Assembly: GCF_006345805.1 (NCBI RefSeq)
Contig: NW_021833714.1
Span: 5,381-69,380, forward strand
Source of the DNA: Octopus sinensis
Lineage: Eukaryota
Direction of reading: 5' to 3'
DNA: 64,000 nucleotides
The notes beneath the pieces are model-generated. The model ran no database searches, was not told the origin of the DNA, and saw only the letters and a program-made list of their open reading frames with translations. The position numbers and the translations under genes were made by a program. Positions 5,345 through 58,795 of the stretch are shown here, piece after piece (within the stretch, counting starts at the first letter, position 1; every line of letters starts with the position of its first letter).

Positions 5345-5387
5345 TTATGATAATAATAATGATAGCAATAACAATAATGAGAATAAC

Positions 5388-5436
<49 letters not shown>

Positions 5437-19756: not shown

Positions 19757-21595
19757 AAAGGTCGACTTTGCCTTCCATCCTTTCCGGATCGATAAATTAA
19801 GTACATGTTGCGTACTGGGATCGATCTAATCGATTTCCCTTCCCCAAAATTTCAGGCCTTGTGCCTCTAGTAGAAAAGATTATTTGTGGCTTCAAAGGTG
19901 GCGAGCTGGCAGAATCGTTAGCACACTGGGGAAAATGCTTAGCGGCATTTCGTCCGTCTTCACGTTCTGAGTTCAAATTCCACCGAGGATCGCTTTGCCT
20001 TTCATCCTTTGGGGTCGGTAAAATAAGTACCAGTGAAACACTGGGGTCGACTTATACCCTTCCTCGAAATTACTGGCCTTGTGCCAAAATTTGAAAACGC
20101 TATTTATAGCTTTAACTAAGACGGCGAGCTGGCAGAATCGTTACCGCACTGAAAAAAAAGTGCTTAGCAGCATTTCTTCCGACTCGGCGTCCTGAGTTCA
20201 AATACGACCGGAGTCGATTTTGCCTTTCAGCCTTTCTGGGTCAATAAAATGAGTAACACTGGAGCACTGGAATCGATGTAATCGACTTACGCCATCCCCT
20301 GAAATTGCTGGCCTTGTGCCAAAATTCGAAGTCATTATTTGTAGCTTCATCTACTTCGAGTCCTTCGACCAATCTATATATTGAAAGAATGTTTGATTCG
20401 TTTCTTCACCCACAATGGTTATGCGCCTCAGTCGTGCGATGGATTGAATTACATCTCATTTTCATAATAGGCAAGTAGTTGAATATTCTTAGCATAGATG
20501 TACCAATGACGTAATTCTCAAATTCAATCAGCGGGATGCTGTGTGCGACAGGGCTGGAAATATGAACTACGATATGAATCTACTCGATGAGCTTCTACAC
20601 GGTTTCAAATCCCACCGAGGCTAACTTTTTGTGATTGGAAAAAGAAAGCGCATCGAACCAAGACGAGGGAAAGACAGAACTGTTAGAATGTCAAGGTGAG
20701 TGCCCTGCGGTATTTGTCCGGCTTTTGGTTATCTGGGAGTAACGCCTGCGGTGACCTTGGTACTAAGCTGTATTAGTCCTTGATTTGTCTTACTTTGGTG
20801 CTTCGTTTGCTTTATTTTGCCTATGACAATACCAGTGATATCAGAGGGGTGATTCAAATTGATGGGAAGCTGCTGAATTTCCGCAATAATAAACTTTATT
20901 TTAATCACGTGCATGCACGTACAGATATATTGTCAACCAGGAGTGACGAAGATCTTTGATGAAGCTAGTAATATTTTCTTGAAACCTGTGTACGAGCCAA
21001 TGAGGGAGTCTCTACGTGTGTACCAATAATATTTACATGAAATCAAGGCAGCAAGCTGGCAGAAACGTTACCGCGCCGCGAGAATTGCTTAGCGGCATTT
21101 CTTCCAAATATATGTTCTGAATTCAAATTCCGTCAAGATCGACTTTGCCTTTCATCCTTTCGGGTTCGATAAGATACGTATCGGCGGCGAGCTGGCAGAA
21201 TCGTTAGCACGCCGGACGAAATGCTTAGCGGTATTTCGTCTGCCGCTACGTTCTGAGTTCAAATTCCGCCGAGGTCGACTTTGCCTTTCATCCTTTCGGG
21301 GTCGATAAATTAAGTACCAGTTACGCACTGAGGTCGATATAATCGACTTAATTCCTTTGTCTGTCCTTGTTTGTCCTCTCTGTGTTTAGCCCCTTGTGGT
21401 AATAAAGAAATAGGCATTTCGTCTGCTGCTACGTTCTAAGTTCTAATTCCGCCGAGGTCGACTTTGCTTTTCATCCTTTTGGGGTCGATAAATTAAATAC
21501 CAGTTACGCACTGGAGTCGATGTAATCGACTTAATCCCTTCGTCTGTCCTTGTTTCTTCTCTCTATGTTTAGCCCCTTGTGGGCAATAAAGAAAT
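19757..21595 (+). mobile_element. Cluster of about six SINE-A copies/fragments, all + strand
   Basis: Core GTCGACTTTGCCTTTCATCCTTT or close variants recur near 19760, 19990, 20215, 21140, 21275 and 21455; best copy 21183-21412. Confidence 0.85.
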
Positions 21596-28802: not shown

Positions 28803-31800
28803 TTTCCATCGGTCGGGACGTCGGCGACCAAATAAGCAACCTCGCAGAGCTTGCTCTGTGAGGAGGGTGTAAGGTTTTTGCTATTTTGACACCCTACAGG
28901 AAGAAGAATAAGACCTGTATAAAGGCTAACGAACTCTTACGATGCAACGGCCACGAAATAGCATATACCTAAGAGGCAGAAACAATCGTAACGCTTAAAC
29001 ACCCCTTCTAGGAGACGGAAACTCCAAAATTAAACCAGGATTACAGGAATCCTGTATCCTAGGGTGGAGATCCTGTCAGTGATGGTGTCATGGGGTAAAA
29101 ATACTAGTGGTTGTGCAACCTAAAAGTCACTAACCCTCATCATGAGTGCTGAAATGTCAAGTAAAAATAGAAATGAGAACTGTGTGAATGAGGCAGGAAT
29201 ACCTTATGAAGGTAAATCGCCCGGTGGGTGCACCACGGGCGAGCAGTGTGGGCCCAGTCGTCATCAAGCAACTGGTAAAAGAAGGTGGACGAAAGAAATT
29301 AATGTGGTTGTAATGGAGTGCTACTTTCTGGGTAAACTGAGAAACGACAATAAAGTACCCACTAAGGGATATAGGAAAAGAATGCACAGGGCATGGAGCG
29401 ACAGAGGTCTATTTGAATTAAAGACCCCCTTCGGTCATGAATGACCATGGGATTGCACCTAGAAAGTTACCCTCCTAGACACAAGTCCGGGCAAGGTTGT
29501 TTTTTTTATGGAAGACCAGCAGTCGCCCATGCATACCAGCCTCTCCTCTCCACGCCACCAGTGTTATCCAAGGGAAAGACAAAGGTAGATACAGCTTGGC
29601 ACCAGTGACGTCGCAACTCATTTCTACAGCTGAGTGAACTATTTGAATTAAGTGAACAAAATTTGTGTGACAAAGCTAAAGCCATCAGAAAGAATGAATG
29701 GTTATCTCTAGTTGAACTAGAAAGCATTAAGAGGTGAGTGCTTAGGAATAGTAACACCAGCGGTGAACGGAAGGATGAGAAAAAGAATGCAGGTAGAGAA
29801 ATTATGACAGTAGAGTTACAGGAAGAAAATGAGCATAAGGCTGAGATTATCGATCAGGAAAGCGATGAGAGAACTGAGGAACAGATATGCATTTTAAATT
29901 AAATTATTGATATTTGGACATCTGGTGAACAGAGCTTTCATACGGGGTTTTAAAAAGTAGACAGAAAGAAATTCAATGAATGGATCAGGAAGATATATGA
30001 TATCATTGGTGATATGAAGACTGACAACATCACAGACACCAATAATCTGATAAATGCAATCTCGATCTTTATAGCCCGGAAGTTAGGTTTGAATGTCAAA
30101 GGTAAATGTCAACATAACCTGAAGGAACCATGGTGGAAAAGGAAAATAACGCAGTCTATTAATGAAATCAGAAATATTAATATTGATATTCTGGAACGGA
30201 AAAAAAGAAATGAAGTTCAGCGAGGGAAATATGTTGAGCTAGAGAGGAGGTATAGGGTGATTGAGGAATTAAAACAGAGGTTGAAAGCTAAAGCACATAA
30301 GCTAAAGAGATATGAACACAGAATTGAGCAATACAGATTAAACAGACTTTTCGAACAAAATCAGAAACGTGTCTATCAGGAACTAGATGGGATAGAAAAA
30401 GGTGAAAAAGCCGTGCAGGATGCTGAAGAAAGAAAAAAATTCTGGTCAAATATATGGTCTTAAGAGAAACGACACGAAAATGAAGCAGAGTGGTTAAAGA
30501 CACTCAAAGAGGAGAATGGAGAGTATCATCAGGAGGATTTACGAATAACCGAGGAGATGGTTAGAGATCAGTACAGGAAAATTCCTAACTGGACAAAAGG
30601 AAGAACGGTACTATTCCAGAAGGACCTAAGTAAACCGAATGCGGTTGGAAATTTTCTACTAATATCTTGCTTGCCACTGTGGAAACTGATGACAGGCATC
30701 ATATCAAACTGCATCTATAAGTACCTAGATGAGAACAACTTGCTACCAGTGGAACAAAAAAGACTTAGGCGTAAGAGAATGGGAATGAAGGATCAATTAC
30801 TAATCGTTATTGGAGCTTGTGCTCCAATCGAAGCTAAATGGTTGCTATAAGATTAGAGCAATTAACACGTGGGCGGTTGCTTTCACGAGTTATGGAGCAG
30901 GAATAGTATCTTGGAAGAAGCATGAATTACAAGAGATAGACCAGAGAACACGTAAATTAATGACAATGAACAAGGAACTACACCCTAAGAATGATGTGTT
31001 GTGAAGGTTGTGTAAATGAAGAAGAGAATAGCCTGGCTTGGTATGTGAAGGGGAGTAAAGAAGAAATGATTGAAGCAGTGAAAATGCAAGGAACCTTAAA
31101 AGTGAACGAAGCCGTGGATCCAACACAATTTAAGAACGAGCAGATGAGGAAAATTTGGCAGGACAAGAAAAATACAGTCAGTTCTTGAAGAATAAAGATG
31201 AGATTGATTGTAATAGAACCTAGCAATGGCTGCAGAAAAAAGATTCATGCAGCACTCAAGAACGAGCTCTCAGAACAAACTACTCCAAATATCACATTGA
31301 TAAAAGCAATGACTCGCTACACTCAGAAGGGAGAAAGTATAATCTATATTGTGAGTGATGTAGGCTCGCACAACGTGAATACAAAAGGAGACACGACAAT
31401 GTGGCCAGATATATCCACTGGCCGTTGTGCGGTAAAGTAAGTCTAGAGAGAGCCGAACAATGGTATGAACACAAACCATAGGGAGTAAACATCACAAAAT
31501 ACTCTGGAATTTTAACATGCAGTGCCTCCAAGTCATAATGGGCGAGACGACCAGATATCGTGCTCATCCATAAAGAGGAAAAAAGAGTAAATATAATAGA
31601 TGTTGCAATAACAGGTGATTGGGGGGTTAAATGTAAGGAAACAGAAAAAATTGAAAATTGAAAAATACCAGCCACTACAAGACGAGATAGGAAAATATTG
31701 GGGGATGAGGAACGTAATGGTTGTAATTGGAGCATTAGGAGCAGTTCTTGAGGGCTTTGAAAAACATATTAGGAATATTGGAGCTGCTGTCAGGCTCGAG

Positions 31801-31962
31801 GTGATCCAGAAGACAGCAATGTTGGGTACAGTTCGCATTCTAAGAAGAGTATTGTCTCTTTGAGTCACAGGAGAAGGCACTACTTGAAACCCTTGGTGAT
31901 TTGTTTTTGCTTGCTTTCAAGTAAAGAATAACCGGTAATTAAGAACTACCCGTAAGTGTTTT
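28803..31962 (+). mobile_element. R4/Dong-clade non-LTR retrotransposon (RLE type), internally deleted and decayed
   Basis: RRWTKEINVVVMECYF N-terminus; KEPWWKRKI; QKRVYQEL; KDQLLI; SKLNG..KIRAINTWAV; RRHDNVARYIHW; PDIVLIHKE; VIGALGAV..IQKTAMLGTVRILRRVL; RT core deleted; (TAA)-type repeats on both sides. Confidence 0.9.
29422..29640 (-). mobile_element. 5'-truncated SINE-D inserted antisense in the Dong ORF, 11-bp TSD
   Basis: ATTTGAATTAA at 29411-29421 and 29641-29651; removing the insert restores DRGLFELSEQNLCDKAKAIRKNEWL. Confidence 0.9.
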
Positions 31963-31985
31963 ATAATAATAATAATAATAATATA

Positions 31986-32051
<66 letters not shown>

Positions 32052-32086
32052 TAATAGTAGTAGTAGTAGTAATAATAATAATAATG

Positions 32087-32118
<32 letters not shown>

Positions 32119-32119
<1 letters not shown>

Positions 32120-32454
32120 GGGGGAGCATCATAGCCATGTGTTGAGAGGGATTCTTTGGGGTTTGAATAATTCACCTCTGGAAACATGGATGGTTCTTTC
32201 AACATCCTTAAACAACCCTTATTCAGGGACCTTTTGAGCGGGATGGGCTACTCAACCTGAAGAAAATTCTAACTGGGCCCCATCTGCAAGGTCATGCGCT
32301 GTTTATCTTGATATGAGATCACCATGTCGCGCACATATGGTTGTGATGCATGTGCCTGGTGTGCCCTTATCAAACGAGTAGTCATGATGGGTATATTGGG
32401 CTTCGTATATTTTACCCCAATGTCACTTTGATGGCATGAACTGCTCTCTCACTC
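32119..32454 (+). mobile_element. Non-coding (TAA)n-embedded retroposon ('passenger'), 5'-truncated copy
   Basis: (TAA)n on both sides; 3' end ...GATGGCATGAACTGCTCTCTCACTC|AATAAT; homologous to 49616-50140. Confidence 0.8.
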
Positions 32455-32526
<72 letters not shown>

Positions 32527-32769
32527 CTTTCACAAGGCCTGAAATTTGGTAGGAGAGTTATAGTCGATTACATCGACCTCAGTTCACAACTGGTACTATT
32601 TCATCGACCCCGAATTATGAAAAGCAAAGTAGACCTCAACGAATTTGAACTCAGATGGTAAAGACGGACGAAATGCAGCTAAGCATTTTGTCCGGCGCGC
32701 TAACCATTCTGCCAGCTTAGAATAATACAATAATAATAATAATAATAATAATATATAATAATAATAATA

Positions 32770-44161: not shown

Positions 44162-44732
44162 TAGATAGATAGATTCGTAAAGCAAAAATGCTATAGACAA
44201 ATACTTAGGTACACAATATTAGTATGTATGTGCGTATGTGTGTATGTGCGTCTGTGCGTGTGAGTGTGTGAGCAAGAATAAAAGAGAAAGAAAGAAACAA
44301 ACAAACAAACAAACAAAGAGAGAAAGGAAAAAAGAAAGACGGAAAGAATGAAGAAAAGAAAGCGTATGCGATATGAGCATGCATTTGATGATGATGATGA
44401 TGATGAAGCGACCAGAACTAAGCAGAACTGTAACGAAGTGGAAGAATATGGTAGAATCATAAAAATGGAGATTCTGTGGACTCTTTGCGCTCAGTTCAAC
44501 TGGAATAGTAAAGCTGACATTTATAGGTTCCAATGGAACTCTTGTTTCTATAAATTACTTTGTTGCTAGGCGTTGCTAACAGCCGAACTTTTTCTCACCG
44601 CACCCGCCCGCCCGCCAGCCCGCCCCTACCACTAAGCGAAAATTTTTAAATATCTCTAATAATTAATTGAATTGCTTTTTGTTCTTTTTTGCTCTTTCTT
44701 CTTCTTCTTCTTCTTATTATTATTATTATTAA

Positions 44733-44813
<81 letters not shown>

Positions 44814-47735: not shown

Positions 47736-47957
47736 GGTGTGAGAAAATGGTTAAGCAATAATTATTCTAGGGAAGATATGAAATAGAGAGTGAAGTGAAG
47801 GAATAAAGAAAACAGACGTGAGCCCCGAATAAGTGCTGCTTAAGGATGCTGAACGAAACACCCATTTCCACAGGTGAATTATCCAAACACCAAAGAATTC
47901 TTTTCAACCTTTGGGTCTTCTTGACACCATTACTTCTCATGACCTCAATTTATATAA

Positions 47958-47990
<33 letters not shown>

Positions 47991-48231
47991 AATGTATGTA
48001 TGTATATATATGAACATACATACATACGTACTGACGCATGCATATTTAAGAATGCATCCACATTCTATATATTTGTATGTTTGTGTGTTGCACATATATT
48101 GTTCATATTTATATATGTTTAGAGATATATAAATGCATCTATGTAAGTCTGGGAATCGAAATCATTACCTCAAGACAGTGAGACCGATGCTCTAACCACT
48201 GAGCCGTGTGTCTTCCCATCTCTTCCCCCTT

Positions 48232-48690: not shown

Positions 48691-49298
48691 CTTTTAGTTT
48701 GTTTTGGGCAAATGCCTCTGAGTACAAAATGGTCCCATGCGTTTTGTTGTCGACTGCCACCTGTTATTCCCATTTCCCAGAGTAATTCTATGGAATGGTT
48801 ATACCTGCGGAACTCCTTACAACTTAAGATTATTATTAGTAATAACGAATATCATTTCTGAATAGGAAATGTTTATATTATATTAATGCATTGCAACATA
48901 CGTTTATGCATACCACATATCCGTTTGTGAATACATTCTCACATCTAGAGAATATTATTAAATATCATTTATAATATCTATGAATCTCTCGAACATGTGA
49001 TTGTCTACACGTATCTTTCATAGGGCATGTATCTATGTATGTATGTATGTAATGTATGTATGTATGTATGCATGTATGCATGTATGTATGTATGTATGTA
49101 TGTATGTATGTATGTATGTATGCAAGTCTACATATATTTCTGATTGTATAAATACATATATATATATATGTGTGTGTGTGCGTGTGTGGATGTACGTATT
49201 AAGGAAAGATATATGAATATTACAACTCTCATCTTTCAAAGAATAACAAGTCAATTGTTTTGAAAGGAAAATAGGGGTGGGGGAGAAAATTCACAGCA

Positions 49299-49400
49299 AC
49301 AATGCTCTTCTCAATACGTGTGATGTAGCAGTTAAAACAGTCTTTTGTATTTCTTGCATGGATGGTAAGCCAGGGATCATCCTCAAATAATTATCAGTTC
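49299..49400 (-). mobile_element. Short Dong-like LINE 3' coding fragment
   Basis: Diverged match to about 50473-50575 (QKIVLTGTSHVLRRAL region); abuts (TAA)n/(TTA)n. Confidence 0.8.
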
Positions 49401-49468
49401 TTTATAATAATAATAATAATAATATTATTAATTATTATTATTATTATTATTTATTATTATTATTATTA

Positions 49469-49505
<37 letters not shown>

Positions 49506-49615
49506 GTTGTTGTGTTGTTGTTATTTTTATTATCATCATCATTATTTTTTCTTATTATATTATTATTATTATCATCATCATTATTTTTATTATTATTATT
49601 ATCATTATAATTACT

Positions 49616-50140
49616 GAGTGAGAGAGCAGTACATGCCATCAAAGTGACACTAGTTTACTCATCATGACTACCCGTCTGATAAGGGTACGCCAGGCACATG
49701 CATCATAACAATATGTGCGCGACATGGGAATCTCATATCAGGATTAACAGTGCATGACCTTGCAGGTGGGGCCCAGTTAGAATTTTCTTCAGGTCGAGGA
49801 GCCTATCTCGCTCAAAAAGGCTCTGAATAAGAGTTATTGAACGAAACACCCATTTTTCCAGGATTAAATTATCCAGACCCCAAAAGAACTCCTTTCAACA
49901 CATTGCTATGATGCTCCCCCACTACTTCTGCTCGTGGTCAGAGATGCACATATCGTCAGCCACTAAGGGACATGCTCAACTGGTTATGGTCAAACAACTG
50001 ACAAGCAAATCTGTGGCATTAAGCAGAATATTTGCTGTAGCCCATCTTTTATACCAAGACAAAACAATGTACATGATAACACTTCCAATCAGTTAAGATC
50101 AGAAGCCACGAGAGCCACTGCCTGACACGGCATCAGTGCA
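49616..50140 (-). mobile_element. (TAA)n-embedded passenger retroposon, longest copy (~525 bp)
   Basis: (TTA)n on both sides on the + strand; shares the 3' end with 32119-32454 and extends ~220 bp further 5'; no ORF. Confidence 0.8.
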
Positions 50141-50157
50141 CTTGGTATTATTATTAT

Positions 50158-50216
<59 letters not shown>

Positions 50217-50227
50217 ATATTATTATT

Positions 50228-50270
50228 GAGTGAGAGACCAGTGCATGCCATCAAAGTAACACTGGGGTAA
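50228..50270 (-). mobile_element. 43-bp extreme 3' fragment of the passenger retroposon
   Basis: GAGTGAGAGACCAGTGCATGCCATCAAAGTAACACTGGGGTAA between (TTA)n tracts. Confidence 0.8.
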
Positions 50271-50291
50271 TTATTATTATTATTATTATTA

Positions 50292-53200
50292 CTTTTTTTT
50301 TTCTTCTTTCAAATTTGCTTCCATTTCTTGCCGAGTGTCTTCCCGACTCCTAGGGCAAAGAAACTTATAGCATACATTGGTAGGCCATTAAACCAAACTC
50401 AGTATTTCGTTCATTTTTTTTTTTTTTTTAAGTTAAATTAAAATACATGAGCAGCAACAGTTCTCACATCGACAATGCTCTTCTCAATACGTGTGATGTA
50501 CCAGTTAAGACAATCTTTTGCACTTCTTGCAGGGATGGTAAGCCAGGGATCATTCTCATATAATTTTCGGTTCCCTTCTTGATCATTCCTAGTGCTCCTA
50601 CGATCACTGGTATTGTAACCGCCTTGAGATGCCACATTTTCTCAATTTCAATGAGTAGGTCTTTATATTTTCTGAGCTTGTCAAACTCTTTCGCTGAGAT
50701 ATTATGATCACAGGGGATGCTCATGTCGATCAATAAGCAAACTTTATTGTTTTGGTCTTTCACAACAATATCTGGTTTATTGGCCTTGATGGTTCGGTCT
50801 GTATGTACTGGAAAGTCCCACAGAATGGTTACATTTTCTCCTTCAGTTACAGCCTCAGGGTGGTGATTATACCACTTGTCGGCAGTTTTGATATTGTAAT
50901 GCCGACTTATTAGCCAGTGGAGATATTGGCCAACTCTGTCATGTCTTAATTTATACTCCACTGGTGCTAAGACTTTACATCCAGAGATTAGGTGGTCCAC
51001 TGTTTCAATCATGTCGTTGCAGAATCGGCATTTTGGGTCTGCTCCATTTTTCATCACATTGGCCTGGTAGTTCCGGGTTAATAGGCTTTGATCTTGAGCA
51101 GCCAGGATGAAACCTTCGCTCTCTGCTTTTAGCCCTGAGCTCCGTAGCCACTGATGGGTTTGCTTCTGGTCAACATCAGCTTGTTTGCTGCGGGTCACAT
51201 ATTTGCCGTGCAGAGGTTTCTCCTCCCACCTATCAGCCAATTGCTCGTGCGCTTTTTTCATTGCCATCATTTTCACCTTCTTTGCAACAATAGTTGCCGT
51301 ACTTCCCTCGGGTTGTTCAGTTTGGGTATCCTGCACGAGATCAATAGCAAATTTTTGCTTTCCTTATGATAGAATGAAGCTTCTTTCGTCTCTCGTGATT
51401 TTCCACGAGCTTTAGCATCCAGTCATTCGATATTTCGAGATATTTGGCCAGTCCAATTGTGGTTGTTTTGTAAGCTAGTTCAAATTGGATCAGGCCTCGA
51501 CCTCTTGGGCTCTGGGAAGGTAAAGGCGATCTACGTCTGCCTTTGGGTGGTGCATCCTATTACAACTCAGCAGCTTGCGTATTTTCTATCTATATTCTTT
51601 ACTTCACTCATATTCCAGTTCAACACATTGTAGCTATAAGTAACAACTGGAACTGCTAAGGAATTTATAGCTAACACCTTGTTACGTGCATTTAGTTCAG
51701 ATTTCAGGACTGCACGAACTCTCCTATAACATTCCTTCCTGATTTCTCTTTCATGCTTGCATGCTGAATACCAGAGCCTTCATTTATCCCTAAATATTTG
51801 TATGTTTGTTCTTGCTCAAGCTCTCTTATGACTGTGTCAACATCTAACACGACTGAATTTGTGGTCTTCACTTTCCCTTTCTGGAAAGTGGCCTTGGCAC
51901 ACTTCTCAAGTCCAAACTCCATCCCGATGTCATCGCTGAATGCTTTCACGGTGCGCAATAGGCCTTCAAGTTCATTATTGTCTTTACCATAAAGTTTTAA
52001 GTCATCCATATAAAATAGATGGCTTATTTTTTTATTGGCAATTTTATACCCATACCCTGTTCTGTTTAATTCACTTGTAAGGGGTATTAGGGCTATGCAG
52101 AATATTAAGGTGAAAGTGAGTCACCTTGAAAAATTCCACAGTTGATGTTTATATTTTCTGAGGCAAGTACTCCATTAGAGTGGTATAATTGGAGATTCGT
52201 ATTCCACAACGACATATTGTGCTTCAGGAAGTTTGAAATCACAGGGGAAATTTTGAAGATGTCCAGCGATCTCAAGATCCATGGATGCGGTATACTGTCG
52301 AAGGCCTTTTTGTAGTCAATCCATGCGGTGCTGAGATTTCTGCGCTTGTTGTGACAGTTCTCAAGGATCATACGATTGATTAGCAGTTGATCTTTGCATC
52401 CGTAAGAGCCTCGGCGGCACCCTTTTTGTTCAATGGGGAAAATATCGTTCTTCTCCATGAATGCATATGTTTTCTCCGCCAGGATAGATGTTAGGATTTT
52501 ATACGTGGTGGATAGACAGGTTATAGGCCGATAGTTTTTTGGAAGGTTGGTTTCGTTATTCTTTGGGAGTAGGTAAGTAATGCCACTTGCTAACCATTCA
52601 GGTGTTTTCTTTGGTCTCTCATAATTCCATTGAGCAGCTGAACTAGCTTACCGTGTGCGCATGGGAGCGATGCGAGCCAGAAATTCGGCACCCTATCTTT
52701 ACCGGGGGATTTCCAATTATGGGCCTTCGTGAGTGCCTTTCTTAGGTCTGCTATTGTGATGTCTTCCCATGCTTGTTGTTGTAAATTTTGGTAGGATCCT
52801 TCAGTTTGTATAATCCAGTCTGCATTTATGTTGTACGTCTTCTTGTCACTCCAAATCCTTTTCCAAAAGTTTTGAACTTCTTCCATGGGAGGGGGGTCTT
52901 TAACGGTTACTTTCTCCTTCCCTATTTCTCTGTAGAATTTTTTGGCATTGGATGTGAACAGCTTATTTTGCTTGTAAAACTTGTTTCTCTTCTCAAATCT
53001 TCGTATTCTTTGGGCTTTTGCTTGGACTTTTTGTTTCAGCGTTTCTTTTATTGATATCAGTTCTTCTCTTGGTGAGGATCCAAATTTTCTCTTCATCTTT
53101 CTTCCTGTTCTGGATCTTACATCATTTCCACATATTAGTTCATTTAATATTGATATTTCCCCTCTCATAAATTCAATCTCTTTTTCAATTTTACTTCTCC

Positions 53201-54254
53201 AGGTTTGATTTCTTCCCAGGTTTTGTTTTCTTTGTTTTTTCGGGGGCATACAGCTGGTTTCAATTGCCCTAGCAGAAGCGTAAATAATTTCATTTAACTC
53301 AGTAAAATCAGGTTTTAATTCTCGTATTATTTCATTTGTTACATAGTTGCCAATTTGGATTTGTTTTTTATTTTGGTTTGTATTTGAGAGTTTATGAAGT
53401 GGTTCTCTATCATTCATACTTGTATGTCTTACAACTTCAAGCGTATTCAGGATTTTCTGCCTCATTTCTGCCATAGACTCTCTGTGTTCTTCAGCAAATG
53501 CGAGATCTTCAGTTACTGTTGTTTTTTCGTTTTCCTGGCTATCTTTAACAGGTACAATAGAATTTCTTGTATCTTCAGGCCTTGCGTACTTTGGTCAGAT
53601 GGCAGTCTTTCAATTAAGCCTCGTGGCGGGCTATACTGTTCATCTGATTCTTCATTTCCTTTGTGTCTTATATTTATGTCATTTTCCGTTGCGTGCTTGA
53701 TCGCGCTTATTTCACTGTCTGTGAGTCTGTTATTTCTAAGGATATCCCTCCTCACATTTGCTAATTTGTTCTCGTCCAAATAGGGCCTACTGTCTTGATT
53801 CCGTGTTCTCCATATACTGTAAGAGTTTGCGGTGTGTCTCTCTTGAGATGGCCTACCTAATGCATAGTAATAAGCGTATATTACTTCTTTATACTCTTCT
53901 CGGGTCCATTTGTTCCGCTTACATTTTTCTTTCTGTGGTGGTTGTGGTGTGAACTTGGAGGGCTCGAGTTGGGGGATTTCCCGTTCAAGTGACCATCCAT
54001 GTCCGTATTCGGAGAAGAGTTTGTGCCAGTTGATGACTTTTCGATCCCAGGCTGGCTCTTCCCTGGGGGACGCGCTTCCAGATTAACCATAGGACAAGCG
54101 ATTTGGTATACTGATTTAGTTTTCCTTTTAGTTTCCAAAAACATTTTGGTGCTACGATAATGTTATCATTTTTTAGCTTTGATTGGCTCGTGGGGAGACG
54201 GCCATCATTGCCGTTACAATTATAATCGTACCATTATAGCAGCCGTAGTCGGCT
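50292..54254 (-). mobile_element. Near full-length R4/Dong-clade RLE non-LTR retrotransposon in (TAA)n
   Basis: 3' UTR ends in an A-run plus (TAA)n; 5' end abuts a TAA-like repeat; all protein domains in order. Confidence 0.95.
50464..54090 (-). pseudogene. Single LINE ORF (N-terminal domain, RT, CCHC knuckle, restriction-like endonuclease), broken by several frameshifts
   Basis: KWTREEY; NWKSPGKD; EQKGCRRGSYGCKDQLLIN; AWIDYKKAFDSIPH; GIFQGDSLSP; MDDLKLY; KYLG; CRFCNDMIETVDHLISGC; KPDIVVKD..LIDMSIP; ORF pieces 53513-53779, 52590-53474, 52105-52458, 51704-52009, 50464-51336. Confidence 0.95.
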
Positions 54255-54613
54255 TATTATTGTTATTATCATCACCATTACCATCACTATCATCATTATC
54301 ACCACCATTACCATCATCATTATCATCATCACCATCACCATCACCATCACCACCATCATCATCAATGATATTGTTTTATGTGTAGTCACAGCAGTATCTT
54401 ATTATTGTTATTTTTGTTTTTTATCCTTATCACCATCACAGTGGTGTCTGTCTGTCTCGTTGGCTGGCTTGATGGTTGGCTGGCTGACTGTCTTCAACAC
54501 CAGAGTTCTTGCCTGTCAAATAATACTTTCTTTGTGTTTGTTGAACTCTTTGAGTGTGTGTGTGTGTGTGTAGATAGATAGATAGATTATCAGCACTATT
54601 ACTATCATTATTA

Positions 54614-54665
<52 letters not shown>

Positions 54666-54714: not shown

Positions 54715-55140
54715 ATTTCATTTCTCAGAAATCTCGATTTCACTTGCTCTGGTTAATTCTGTAAGAGCGGACAACAACCTGGATCTCACGGGCTCTCTAC
54801 CCACAGTACTTGACGTCCAAGCTCTGATTTCAGAATCCTCGATGACTCCAATAGAACAATTTTCTGAGCACGTTTCGCTACCATGTCAACCCTAATTTCC
54901 CCAACAAATTTCTCAAATCCGGTTGTTAATGTTCCCAATGCTCCACCAAACTACCGGGATCACAGTTATTTTCTTCATTGCCCTCATTCGTGCAATGTTA
55001 TTTTTTAGTGGCTTGCACTTTCAAAATGAATTGTAAAATCCCACGAGAATTTTTTTAACTCATTATCCTCGGTGACGCTTTTTGGATTGCCCTCTTATCA
55101 TTTCAATGTCCTTTCAAGACCGTTCTTCTCACACAATCGC
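54715..55140 (-). mobile_element. Old Dong-like LINE 3' fragment (third subfamily)
   Basis: Minus strand ARMRAMKKITVIPVV..GALGTLTTGFEKFVGEI..AQKIVLLESSRIL; 3' side runs into (TAA)/(CAT) repeats. Confidence 0.75.
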
Positions 55141-55967
55141 CAATGGATATACTTAGCTATGTTCCCATGACTCCTCCACCTTCTCCTCCTCCACCTCCTC
55201 CTCCAACTCCTCCTCCTCCTCCTCCACCTCTCCTCGTTATTATTATTGCTGTTTTGGTTCTTCTTATTATTATTGTTATTGTCATCTATGTATTAATACA
55301 CTGCGGGCGAATTGCCTTTCGCTGTCACAGGTGAAGGAAGAGGCAAAGAACGAGAGAGAAGTGTTAACGACGTGAGGTTGGGGGGAAGTAATAGTTATCA
55401 TGCTAAGAAGCTGTCATGTGATTAATTCAAGGGGAAAATGAACCGACAGAGAGGGGGAGGGAGAGAGTGAGTGAGTGTGAGAAAGAGAGAGAGAGAGAGA
55501 GATAGATAGAATGTTAGCACTGAGAGACAAGAGAAATGGTATTGCTCTTGCGTTAGTGTGGTTAGTTGAGGAAAGCGATAAAAAGCAGAGAGAGATATTA
55601 GCATGTTAAGTTCTGAAGGCATGTGGTTTAGTTAAAACGAGATGCAAAGAGAAAGAGAGGGAGAAAGCGAGTGAGTGTTGCTTGAATGAATGTGGGAGTG
55701 AAAAGTAGTTTCATGATTTTAAACGTCGTAATAGAATATTGTGACAGACACTAAAAATAAAACTATAATTGTTACAGGTTTTAATGTTCAATCGTTTCTA
55801 TGTCTTCAATTTGTCGATGTATCTATGTGGATTCGTAGATTTAGTGACGGAGAGAAGACAGGAAGAAGGATGGCTAGATATATCGATACAGTTCAATCGA
55901 AGTGAAGTAACCTTAGCAAATACCTGTGGATGTTATTTTTACCCTTATTACCTTCTTATGTCCGCAG

Positions 55968-56230: not shown

Positions 56231-56816
56231 CTGACTGATTGATTGATTGATTGATTGATTGATGATTGATTGATTGATTGATTGCTCCTTGTGTGGATTT
56301 TTTACATCTCAGAATCAAGTGCTTAACAAAGACTGTACAATTTCATCGTACAATTTTCTAAATAACTGCAGAATTTCCGTGGTGATATGATGTCCTTACG
56401 TTCTGAGTTCAAATTTTACCAAGGTCGATTTTGCCTTTCATCCTTTCAGGGTCGATAAATTAAGTACCATTGGAGTACTGGGATTGATGTAATCGACTTA
56501 CCCATTCCCATAACATTTCTGGCATTGTGCCTTTAGTAGAAAGGATTATTATCATCATCATCAACATCATTATTATTACTATTATTATTATCATCATCAT
56601 CATCATCATCATCATCATTATTATGATTATTATTATTATTATGATTATTATTATTATTGTTATTATTATTTTTATTATCATCATCATCATCATCATCATC
56701 ATCATTATTATTATTATTATGATTATTATTATTTTTATTATTATCATCATCATCATTATTATTATTATTATTATTATATTATTATTATTATTATTATTAT
56801 TATATTATTATTATTA

Positions 56817-56853
<37 letters not shown>

Positions 56854-56870
56854 CATTATTATTATTATTA

Positions 56871-56916
<46 letters not shown>

Positions 56917-57627
56917 GACAGCGAGCTGGCAGAATCCTTAGCACGTTGGGCGAAATGCTTAGTGGTATTTCTGAATTCAAATCCTACCGAGGCTGACTTT
57001 GCCTTTCATCTTTTCAGGGCCGATTAATTAAATACCAGTTGAACACTGGGGTCGATGTGATCGACACATCTCCTCCCACAAAATGGCTGCCTTTGTGGCA
57101 AGATTTAAAACCATTATTATTGTTGTTGTTGTTGTTGTTAAGACGGTAAGCGGGCGGAATCGTTGGCATGCCGGACAAGATGCAGTTTCACATTGTGAAT
57201 CAGGTGACATCTGTAGATTCTCAATGTGCCTGAAGCAGAAACAGATGTTAGACATGTGTTAGCATATGTGCGTGGATGTGTATTGTGTGTTGTGTGCATG
57301 TGTGTGTATATTTGTGTGTGTGTGTGTGTGCGCGCGCGCATGTGTGTGTGTTTGTGTGTGTGTGTGCGTGTGTGCGTGTGTGTGTGTTTGTGTGTGTTTG
57401 TGTATGTGCGTGTTTTTATGTGTGTGCGTGTTTGTGTGTATGTGTGTGTGTGTGTGTTGGATGGGTACGTGCCTATGTGTATGCGTGCACGCATGGGTGT
57501 GTTTGTGTGTGTGTTTGTTTGTGTGTTTGTATGCGTGTGTGTGTGTTTGTATGTGCGCGCGCGTGTGTGTGTGTTTGTGTGTGTATATGTGCGTGTGTGT
57601 GTGCTTTGTGTGCGTGCGTGTTTGTGC

Positions 57628-58150: not shown

Positions 58151-58795
58151 ATTTATTGACAGATTGAAAGGCAGGATGAAAGGCAATTTATCGACAGGAT
58201 AAAAGGCAATTTATCGACAGGTTGAAAGGCAATTTATTAGCAGGATAAAAGGCAATTTACCGTCAGGATGAAAGGCAATTTATCGACAGGATGAAAGCCT
58301 ATTTATGGACAGGATTAAAGGCAATTTATCGACAAGATGAAAGGTAATTTATCGACAGGATAAAAGGCAATTTATCGACAGGATGAAAGGCAATTTATCG
58401 ACAAGATGAAAGGCAATTTATTATCAGGATAAAAGGCAATTTATCGACAAGATGAAAGGCAATTTATCGACAGGACGAAAGGCAATTTATCATCAGGATA
58501 AAAGGCAATTTATCGACAAGATGAAAGGGAATTTATCGACAGGATTAAAGGGAATTTATCGACAGGATTAAAGGCAATTTATCGACACGATGAAAGGTAA
58601 TTTATCGACAGGATAAAAGGCAATTTATCGACAGGATAAAAGGCAATTTATCGACTGGATGAAAGGCAATTTATCGACAGGATGAAAGCCTATTTATGGA
58701 CAGGATAAAAGGCAATTTATCGACTGGATGAAAGGCAATTTATCGACTGGATGAAAGCCTATTTATGGACAGGATAAAAGGCAATTTATCGACAG
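58151..58795. repeat. 23-bp minisatellite (~27 units) derived from the SINE-A core
   Basis: Unit AGGAT(G/A)AAAGGCAATTTATCGAC; grows directly out of a minus-strand SINE-A at ~58100-58170. Confidence 0.9.

What the first reader, a model, noticed from the sequence alone, without database searches (positions are those of the whole stretch)
49616..50270. Non-coding passenger retroposon that co-targets (TAA)n and trails Dong LINEs
Seen: three copies (32119-32454 +, 49616-50140 -, 50228-50270 -) end at the same base (...CTCTCTCACTC) and are 5'-truncated to 336, ~525 and 43 bp. Each is embedded in TAA repeats on its sense strand. Each lies 20-700 bp 3' of a Dong LINE in the same orientation. There is no ORF, no recognisable tRNA head and no obvious shared 3' tail with either Dong here. 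Established: a fixed 3' end with variable 5' truncation is the signature of target-primed reverse transcription. Inference: a sequence-specific non-autonomous partner mobilised in trans by a TAA-targeting RLE LINE. An eroded internal fragment at ~47826-47910 is not in TAA.
Basis: partly seen in the sequence, partly recalled or inferred. Interest (0 to 1): 0.7.

Follow-up and report, generated by a model that had tools for sequence, protein, structure and literature searches.

The report
Non-coding retroposon inserted in TAA repeats
A short non-coding repeat has been copied at least three times into TAA microsatellites, beside Dong-type jumping genes that use the same target; it is probably a parasite of such an element, but without the host genome it could still be the long tail of an unseen fourth one.

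Summary
BLASTN and nhmmer find four pieces of one family, here called X. They are 32119-32454 (+, 336 bp), 49616-50145 (-, 530 bp), 50228-50270 (-, 43 bp) and an internal scrap at about 47821-47930 (-). The first three end at the same base (…CTCTCACTC), have different 5' ends, and sit inside (TAA)n on their sense strand.

X has no sense-strand ORF over 38 aa, no Rfam or tRNA match, and no trace of an RLE-LINE C-terminus.

The neighbouring LINEs have an RT, a CCHC motif and an R2-like restriction-like endonuclease, and they end in (TAA)n. Three such families lie in the window; none shares X's tail. Nine 3' UTRs of this clade measure 78-192 bp, against at least 530 non-coding bp for X.

"Trailing" is best explained by shared target use. 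Both loci are same-orientation nests of TAA-specific insertions, and at the plus-strand locus the array adjoins a SINE's (ATT)n tail.

Non-autonomy is plausible (about 0.5) but unproven. No eukaryotic genome could be searched, so a fourth Dong lineage with a long 3' UTR remains a live rival (about 0.3). The two long copies share a sense-strand RNA fold with weak covariation support.

This is modest interest: a likely new member of a known kind.

The parts
49616..50145 (-). X copy B, the longest copy (530 bp). The 5' 225 bp are found nowhere else in the window.
50228..50270 (-). X copy C, the 43-bp 3' end only, 21 bp downstream of the LINE R 3' end.
32119..32454 (+). X copy A, 336 bp, starting at GGGGGAGC. 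It carries 10-bp and 21-bp segments absent from B.
47821..47930 (-). Eroded internal X fragment, not in TAA. It shares the 10-bp segment with A and aligns about 20 nt 5' of A's start with B.
50271..50291 (-). (TAA)7 between the LINE R 3' end and copy C.
50146..50227 (-). Spacer between C and B: (AAT)3, a perfect (TAC)20, then (TAA)4.
49423..49615 (-). Degenerate (TAA)n 3' of copy B, with GAT and AAC variants.
31963..32118 (+). (TAA)53 between the LINE L 3' end and copy A.
32455..32526 (+). Perfect (AAT)24 3' of copy A. On the other strand it is the (ATT)n tail of the adjacent SINE.
32527..32722 (-). SINE copy whose (ATT)n tail adjoins the array holding LINE L and copy A and probably seeded it.
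50292..54590 (-). LINE R, a Dong-like RLE LINE of about 4.3 kb, frameshifted. It has an RT with YMDD, a CCHC motif, an RLE, a 172-bp 3' UTR and a (TAA)n tail. The 5' limit is approximate.
28803..31962 (+). LINE L, a second, decayed Dong-like family. Its 3' UTR is about 99 bp and it ends in (TAA)n.
54722..55170 (-). LINE T, a 5'-truncated 3' end of a third Dong-like family, followed by (TAA)n at 54617-54664.
49291..49400 (-). R' fragment, a 5'-truncated LINE R-like piece (89% nt identity) at the 3' side of the nest.
32126..32144 (+). 5' arm of the 19-bp long-range stem in copy A. It pairs with 32330-32349. In copy B the arms are 49914-49896 and 49719-49700.

Best explanation
X is a family of non-coding retroposed sequences specific for (TAA)n microsatellites.

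Shown: each dated copy was made from the 3' end of an X RNA and stopped at a different 5' point. Each was inserted into a TAA array in the polarity used by the Dong/R4-type RLE LINEs that fill the same arrays.

Inferred: a Dong-type protein (RT plus restriction-like endonuclease) nicks (TAA)n and binds the structured 3' domain of X RNA. It then primes reverse transcription from the nick, as R2 does for its own 3' UTR and for its SIDE parasites. On this reading X is a non-autonomous passenger served in trans.

The partner is not LINE R, L or T of this window, because none shares X's tail.

The closeness to Dong LINEs is a by-product of shared target use. TAA arrays, at least some of which start as (ATT)n tails of a SINE on the opposite strand, accumulate head-to-tail nests of every TAA-specific element. 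Each insertion adds new TAA repeats.
For: - The common 3' end, the variable 5' ends, and TAA on both flanks in one polarity are all seen directly.
- Copies A and B differ by 21% and have unrelated flanks, so they are independent events.
- There is no coding capacity. tblastn of 120 RLE-LINE C-termini against X gives a best E of 0.03, whereas the same clade's last 110 aa detect LINE L at 37% identity and the L002 lineages at 34-36%.
- Nine 3' UTRs of this LINE clade, from the window and from L001-L003, are 78-192 bp, against at least 530 non-coding bp in X.
- X has more pieces in the window (4) than any single LINE family (at most 2).
- All X pieces are 530 bp or shorter, whereas the Dong-like LINEs here and in L002 are mostly 3-5 kb.
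- The RNAalifold consensus of A plus B is -76.9 kcal/mol, against -47.2 +/- 5.1 for 300 column shuffles (0 as low) and -50.2 for the reverse complement. It has 5 compensatory pairs against 1.5 +/- 1.1 (2 of 300). Copy A alone has z = -3.1.
- Nest architecture is seen in this window and in L002, where 6-7 Dong-like LINEs lie head-to-tail between short (TAA)n runs.
- SIDE parasites of R2 are documented (PMC3414825). Dong targets (TAA)n in insects and in a mollusc (PMC3812793).
Against: - No partner LINE with the same 3' tail was found. X's true full length and 5' end are unknown, because only one copy reaches 530 bp.
- There are only three datable copies from two loci, and no genome-wide census. 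The six-frame protein searches and the exact-pattern DNA scans of the available collections all returned nothing.
- No small-RNA head, ribozyme or promoter was recognised. T4-5 runs inside X argue against pol III transcription.
- The covariation evidence rests on two sequences. The tool's own control is weak (17 of 500 shuffles reach the observed value). The paired versus unpaired substitution difference is not significant (10.4% vs 17.2%, p = 0.12). Copy B alone folds only marginally better than shuffles (z = -1.9 for the 3' part and -1.4 for the whole).
Confidence: 0.5

Rival explanations
1. X is simply the 3' end of a fourth, autonomous Dong-like LINE family whose 3' UTR is unusually long (over 530 nt). 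The three copies are ordinary, severely 5'-truncated LINE insertions.
For: - 5'-truncated LINE copies are the commonest source of this pattern.
- Two of the four Dong-like LINE pieces in the window (T, about 450 bp, and R', about 110 bp) are as short as the X copies.
- Several divergent Dong lineages, each with its own 3' UTR, coexist here.
- O. vulgaris is reported to have five recently active Dong-R4 families (PMC13282606).
- From memory, not checked here: 3' UTRs of several hundred nt occur in the R2 clade.
Against: - All nine measured 3' UTRs of this clade are 78-192 bp.
- Copy B holds no remnant of the well conserved C-terminal 110 aa.
- None of the four X pieces exceeds 530 bp.
Confidence: 0.3
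2. X is a SINE-like or non-autonomous element, or a repeatedly retroposed host transcript, with a (TAA)n tail, moved by a LINE that is not of the RLE type (for example an APE-type LINE with a TAA tail). It lands in TAA arrays because its (UAA)n tail anneals to nicked TTA/TAA DNA.
For: - Microsatellite-specific APE-type LINEs exist: Waldo, Mino, Kibi and Koshi (PMC3812793).
- RTE is the dominant LINE of octopus genomes (PMC8967140, PMC9115989).
- The partner is unidentified, so its clade is not established.
Against: - The only TAA-tailed autonomous elements seen in this window and in the related loci are RLE LINEs.
- There is no poly(A) between X's end and the TAA repeats, which argues against an mRNA origin.
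Confidence: 0.12
3. The X pieces were co-inserted with the neighbouring LINE in a single event. This could happen by a template jump of the RT from a short X cDNA onto a LINE RNA, or through read-through (3'-transduction-like) transcripts. On this reading 'trailing' is mechanistic.
For: - Copy C is only 43 bp long and lies 21 bp 3' of a near full-length LINE R.
- R2 RT makes template jumps in vivo (PMC3414825).
Against: - Another LINE R copy (L001, 97% identical) has at least 54 bp of (TAA)n and no X after its 3' end.
- X follows two unrelated LINE families (L and R) at different distances.
- LINE R looks young (97% identical to L001), while X copies differ by 9-21%.
- Copy B is preceded by copy C, not by a LINE.
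Confidence: 0.06

Closest known systems
R2 SIDEs (short internally deleted elements; Eickbush & Eickbush 2012, PMC3414825)
   Same: Both are non-coding and site-specific, and both are inserted by TPRT with variable 5' junctions. Both depend on an RLE LINE that recognises a structured 3' RNA, and both live in the same target array as the autonomous element.
   Different: SIDEs carry the 5' ribozyme and the 3' UTR of their parent R2. X shares neither end with any LINE in the window, and no ribozyme was detected. The target is a microsatellite, not 28S rDNA.
Dong / R4-clade LINEs targeting (TAA)n (Xiong & Eickbush 1993; Kojima & Fujiwara 2004, as cited in PMC3812793)
   Same: Same target and same polarity relative to TAA, with (TAA)n directly after the 3' end, 5' truncation and nesting in arrays.
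   Different: X has no ORF and no RT/RLE remnant. Its non-coding length is about 3-7 times the 3' UTRs measured for Dong-like LINEs here.
Classical SINEs paired with stringent LINEs (3' tail shared with the partner; PMC5786205)
   Same: Short, non-coding, and probably more numerous than any one LINE family. Presumed to be mobilised in trans through 3' end recognition.
   Different: X has no tRNA, 5S, 7SL or snRNA head, and internal T runs make pol III transcription unlikely. The shared-tail criterion is not met for the LINEs at hand.

Membership tests
SINE (LINE-dependent, pol III) | Head derived from tRNA, 7SL, 5S or snRNA, with an internal pol III promoter | tested here: not met
   ARAGORN finds 0 genes. 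Rfam finds nothing at gathering score and nothing credible at E<=10 over both long copies. T4-5 runs lie inside X. Caveat: copy B may be 5'-truncated.
SINE / non-autonomous LINE derivative | 3' tail shared with an autonomous partner LINE | tested here: not met
   No similarity to the 3' UTRs of LINE R, L, T or R', or to L001-L004. A partner elsewhere in the genome could not be searched for.
SINE / non-autonomous LINE derivative | Discrete full length below about 1 kb with no coding capacity | tested here: inconclusive
   All four pieces are 530 bp or shorter and non-coding. With one long copy, the full length is undefined.
SIDE (internally deleted RLE LINE) | 5' end (ribozyme or 5' UTR) and 3' UTR both derived from the parent LINE | tested here: not met
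   B's 5' 225 bp and X's 3' domain match nothing in LINE R, L or T. No HDV-like or other ribozyme was found by Rfam. Not testable against LINEs outside the window.
5'-truncated Dong/R4-clade LINE | Longer copies continue into an RT-CCHC-RLE ORF | not testable with these tools
   No eukaryotic genome collection was available. The metagenome, GTDB and IMG/VR pattern scans gave 0 hits.
5'-truncated Dong/R4-clade LINE | 3' UTR of the length usual for the clade, preceded by the conserved C-terminal coding region | tested here: not met
   The clade's UTRs are 78-192 bp (n = 9). Copy B is 530 bp without any C-terminal remnant.
TAA-specific TPRT retroposon (functional class) | Fixed 3' end, variable 5' end, and (TAA)n on both flanks in one polarity | tested here: met
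Dong/R4-type RLE LINE (for the neighbours R, L and T) | RT, then a CCHC motif, then a C-terminal PD-(D/E)xK endonuclease, with the element ending in (TAA)n | tested here: met
   RVT_1 scores E 6e-31. A profile of the C-terminus hits the CCHC and RLE regions of R2 proteins 9nl3, 9dou and 9nl2 at E 2e-5 to 4e-4. TAA tails are seen in the window and in L001-L003. Placement within R4/Dong rather than another RLE clade was not tested by phylogeny.

The most novel reading that the evidence does not exclude
X is a true non-autonomous, structured-RNA parasite of microsatellite-specific Dong/R4-clade LINEs. It would be the first such partner described for this clade; a 2018 survey lists bipartite non-autonomous derivatives only for the RTE, Ingi and R2 clades (PMC5786205). 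It may use a 3' domain that mimics the LINE 3' UTR in fold rather than in sequence.
Probability: 0.35. Interest if true: 0.5.

Novelty: new member of a known kind. Interest (0 to 1): 0.3.

Why it matters
If X is non-autonomous, site-specific parasitism of RLE LINEs is not confined to rDNA, where R2 SIDEs are the known case. It would extend to microsatellite targets in a mollusc-type genome where Dong-R4 elements are abundant and reported as recently active.

A short RNA that a TAA-specific RLE protein accepts would also be a handy natural template for studying how R2-like enzymes recognise RNA. That question is of current interest for targeted gene insertion.

If X is only a long LINE 3' UTR, the finding is ordinary repeat annotation.

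Tried and rejected
1. I searched the 5.8-billion-protein collection twice with a six-frame translation of copies A and B, hoping to find spurious ORFs in other copies and then fetch their contigs. There were no hits even at E<=10. That used two of the three searches.
2. Exact-pattern scans for the 3' end and for the most conserved internal 20-mer gave 0 hits in JGI metagenomes, GTDB genomes and IMG/VR.
3. An exact look-up of the window's 290-aa LINE ORF found nothing on record, so the source genome seems to be absent from the collection.
4. Rfam found nothing usable: gathering threshold on the whole window, and E<=10 on both long copies and on the LINE R 5' region. This gives no snRNA, rRNA, tRNA or ribozyme origin.
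5. A SIDE of LINE R, L or T is rejected, because neither end of X matches them.
6. A fixed composite of LINE R plus copy C is rejected, because L001 lacks X after the same LINE.
7. Penelope-like or retrozyme origins were considered. No hammerhead or other ribozyme match was found, and the target and polarity fit Dong instead.
8. The supplement of the O. vulgaris repeat paper holds no consensus library.

Full report
**Observation**

The three copies exist as described.
- BLASTN and an exhaustive nhmmer profile search find four related pieces in the window and nothing else.
  - Copy B is 49616-50145 (-, 530 bp).
  - Copy A is 32119-32454 (+, 336 bp) and is 78.6% identical to the 3' 305 bp of B.
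  - Copy C is 50228-50270 (-, 43 bp) and is about 91% identical to both.
  - An internal fragment lies at about 47821-47930 (-, 82% identical, E 2e-16).
- A, B and C end at the same base...CT(C/G)TCTCACTC, followed directly by AAT repeats.
- Their 5' junctions differ, and each abuts TAA repeats.
- TAA-type arrays make up about 2.3% of the window. TAA on both flanks of three insertions, always in the same polarity, is therefore far beyond chance.
- The fragment at 47.8 kb is not in TAA. It shares a 10-bp segment with A that B lacks, and it aligns for about 20 nt upstream of A's start with B. B's 5' extension therefore belongs to the family, at least in part.

**What X lacks**

- The longest sense ORF is 38 aa, and the longest on either strand is 62 aa.
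- ARAGORN finds no tRNA anywhere in the window.
- Rfam finds nothing at gathering score in the window, and nothing credible at E<=10 in either long copy. There is therefore no tRNA, 5S, 7SL or snRNA head and no recognisable ribozyme.
- Runs of four or five T inside X make pol III transcription of the whole unit unlikely (read from the sequence).
- tblastn of 120 C-termini of the neighbouring LINE clade against X gives only noise, with a best E of 0.03.

**The neighbours**

- LINE R, at about 54590-50292 (-), has an RT domain (RVT_1, E 6e-31, YMDD).
- A profile of its C-terminal 290 aa and 24 relatives matches only R2 retrotransposon proteins in the PDB: 9nl3, 9dou and 9nl2, at E 2e-5 to 4e-4. 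The alignment covers the CCHC motif and the PD...D...K endonuclease.
- LINE R is frameshifted.
- A 1983-bp contig from an ENA metagenome (L001) is 97% identical to it and ends in the same 3' UTR followed by (TAA)n. Its record name (MG_IT_BO) suggests a Bologna sewage sample. This fixes LINE R's 3' end at about 50292 and shows that X is not part of it.
- LINE L (28803-31962, +) and a fragment of a third family, LINE T (55170-54722, -), have the same C-terminal architecture and also end in (TAA)n.
- A short R-like piece, R', lies at 49400-49291.
- Relatives in two other loci, L002 and L003 from another species, also end in (TAA)n.
- Calling these LINEs Dong/R4-like is reasonable. Dong is the known (TAA)n-specific RLE LINE, including in a mollusc (PMC3812793). 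I did not run a clade phylogeny.

**Architecture**

Both X loci are nests.
- On the minus strand the order 5' to 3' is: T fragment, (TAA)n, LINE R, (TAA)7, copy C, (AAT)3-(TAC)20-(TAA)4, copy B, degenerate (TAA)n, R' fragment.
- On the plus strand the order is: (TAA)154, LINE L, (TAA)53, copy A, (AAT)24, then a SINE on the opposite strand whose own tail is that (ATT)n array.
- Several other copies of this SINE subfamily in the window also carry ATT tails. This suggests how TAA targets arise.
- L002 shows the same thing in another genome: six or seven Dong-like LINEs lie head-to-tail on one strand, separated by short (TAA)n.

"Trailing a Dong LINE" is therefore what one expects of any two element families that use the same target in the same polarity. 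Three further points weigh against co-insertion.
- L001 carries no X after LINE R.
- X follows two different LINE families at 157, 21 and 146 bp.
- LINE R looks young (97% to L001), while X copies differ by 9-21%.

**Non-autonomous element or LINE tail?**

This is the crux, and it could not be settled. No eukaryotic genome collection was reachable. Exact-pattern scans of the metagenome, GTDB and IMG/VR collections and two six-frame protein searches found nothing.

Indirect evidence favours a non-coding unit.
- The nine 3' UTRs I could measure in this LINE clade are 78-192 bp. X is non-coding for at least 530 bp.
- The clade's last 110 aa are conserved enough to be detected at 34-37% identity, yet nothing of them is seen in B.
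- All four X pieces are 530 bp or shorter, whereas most Dong-like LINE copies here and in L002 are 3-5 kb.
- X has more pieces in the window than any single LINE family.

None of this excludes a fourth Dong lineage with a long 3' UTR. I put that at about 0.3 and true non-autonomy at about 0.5.

**RNA structure**

- A and B share a consensus fold on the sense strand. RNAalifold gives -76.9 kcal/mol, against -47.2 +/- 5.1 for 300 column shuffles (none as low) and -50.2 for the reverse complement.
- There are 5 compensatory pairs, against 1.5 +/- 1.1 in shuffles (2 of 300 reach 5).
- The core is a 19-bp stem. GCAUCAUAGC(C/A)AUGUGUUG pairs with CGCACAUAU(G/U)GUU(G/A)UGAUGC across about 185 nt. It holds one C-G to A-U exchange and several G-U pairs that work only on the sense strand.
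- Copy A alone folds with z = -3.1, B's 3' part with z = -1.9, and whole B with z = -1.4.
- The first six bases of A (GGGGGA) pair with UCUCUC near the 3' end, so A corresponds to one closed domain.
- With only two sequences this is suggestive, not proof. The tool's own shuffle control reaches the observed values in 17 of 500 shuffles. Substitutions are not significantly rarer in paired columns (10.4% vs 17.2%, p = 0.12), although all 33 indel columns are unpaired.
- A conserved sense-strand fold fits an RNA that an R2-like protein must recognise. It does not distinguish a parasite from a LINE's own 3' UTR.

**Mechanism**

Shown: repeated copying from a fixed 3' end into (TAA)n, in Dong polarity.

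Inferred from R2 biology (PMC3414825): a Dong-type protein nicks the TAA array, binds X's structured 3' domain, primes reverse transcription from the nick, and often stops early.

Not shown: which LINE supplies the protein, how X is transcribed, and X's full length.

**Comparison with what is known, and novelty**

- The closest analogues are R2 SIDEs and SINE/LINE pairs of the stringent type.
- X fails the defining tests of both against the LINEs at hand. It has no shared tail, no parental 5' end and no small-RNA head.
- A 2018 survey lists bipartite non-autonomous derivatives for the RTE, Ingi and R2 clades only (PMC5786205). A Dong/R4 partner would be a modest novelty.
- O. vulgaris is reported to have five recently active Dong-R4 families and hundreds of unclassified SINE families (PMC13282606). 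X may therefore already sit unnamed in a repeat library.
- The window's organism was not identified. The SINE and Dong content and the metagenome match suggest an edible mollusc such as an octopus, but that is inference only.

**Verdict**

X is most likely a new member of a known kind, of modest interest (0.3). A single genome-wide BLAST would settle the question.

Noticed in passing
window 32527-32722 (-), 56392-56529 (+), 56924-57097 (+), 19759-20318 (+), and about 15 further hits: An abundant SINE family has about 19 hits in 64 kb. One subfamily ends ...CCTTGTGAAAG followed by (ATT)n, so its tails are a likely source of the (TAA)n arrays colonised by Dong-like LINEs and X. Other subfamilies end differently (…TAGCCCCTTGTGG…AAAGAAATA).
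   Followed up: partly
L002 1-20858 (ENA ERZ25067903 ctg31943, another species): Six or seven Dong-like LINEs of at least two lineages (34-68% aa identity to LINE R) lie head-to-tail on one strand, separated by short (TAA)n. This TAA nest has no short non-coding passenger.
   Followed up: partly
window 50464-51336 (-) and protein hits P0001-P0120: The LINE R C-terminus has 50-72% aa relatives in very distant animals (Clytia, Penaeus, Oculina, Holothuria) and in many metagenome contigs. That is unusually high conservation for a LINE across phyla and might reflect horizontal transfer.
   Followed up: no
L001 (ENA ERZ22666216): A metagenome contig carries a 97% identical copy of LINE R, so eukaryotic DNA is present in that metagenome. 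Its record name (MG_IT_BO) suggests a Bologna sewage sample, in which case the DNA is probably from food. This is the only near-identical relative found anywhere.
   Followed up: partly
window 50158-50216: A perfect (TAC)20, read on the minus strand, sits inside the TAA array between copies C and B. It is a derived microsatellite variant that expanded after, or during, the insertions.
   Followed up: no
window 58172-58795: A 23-bp unit (CAGGATGAAAGGCAATTTATCGA) is repeated 27 times. It resembles an internal SINE segment (…GGATGAAAGGCAAAATCGACC…), suggesting a minisatellite born from the SINE body.
   Followed up: no
window 48140-48230 (-): A tRNA-like stretch (…GGCTCAGTGGTTAGAGCATCGGTCTCAC…TTCGATTCCC…) adjoins a long (TACA)n array. 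It is probably the head of another SINE family and is not called by ARAGORN.
   Followed up: no
window 44714-44810, 56569-56915, 5350-5434: These TAA arrays of up to 347 bp carry no Dong-like or X insertion, so occupancy of the target is far from saturated.
   Followed up: no
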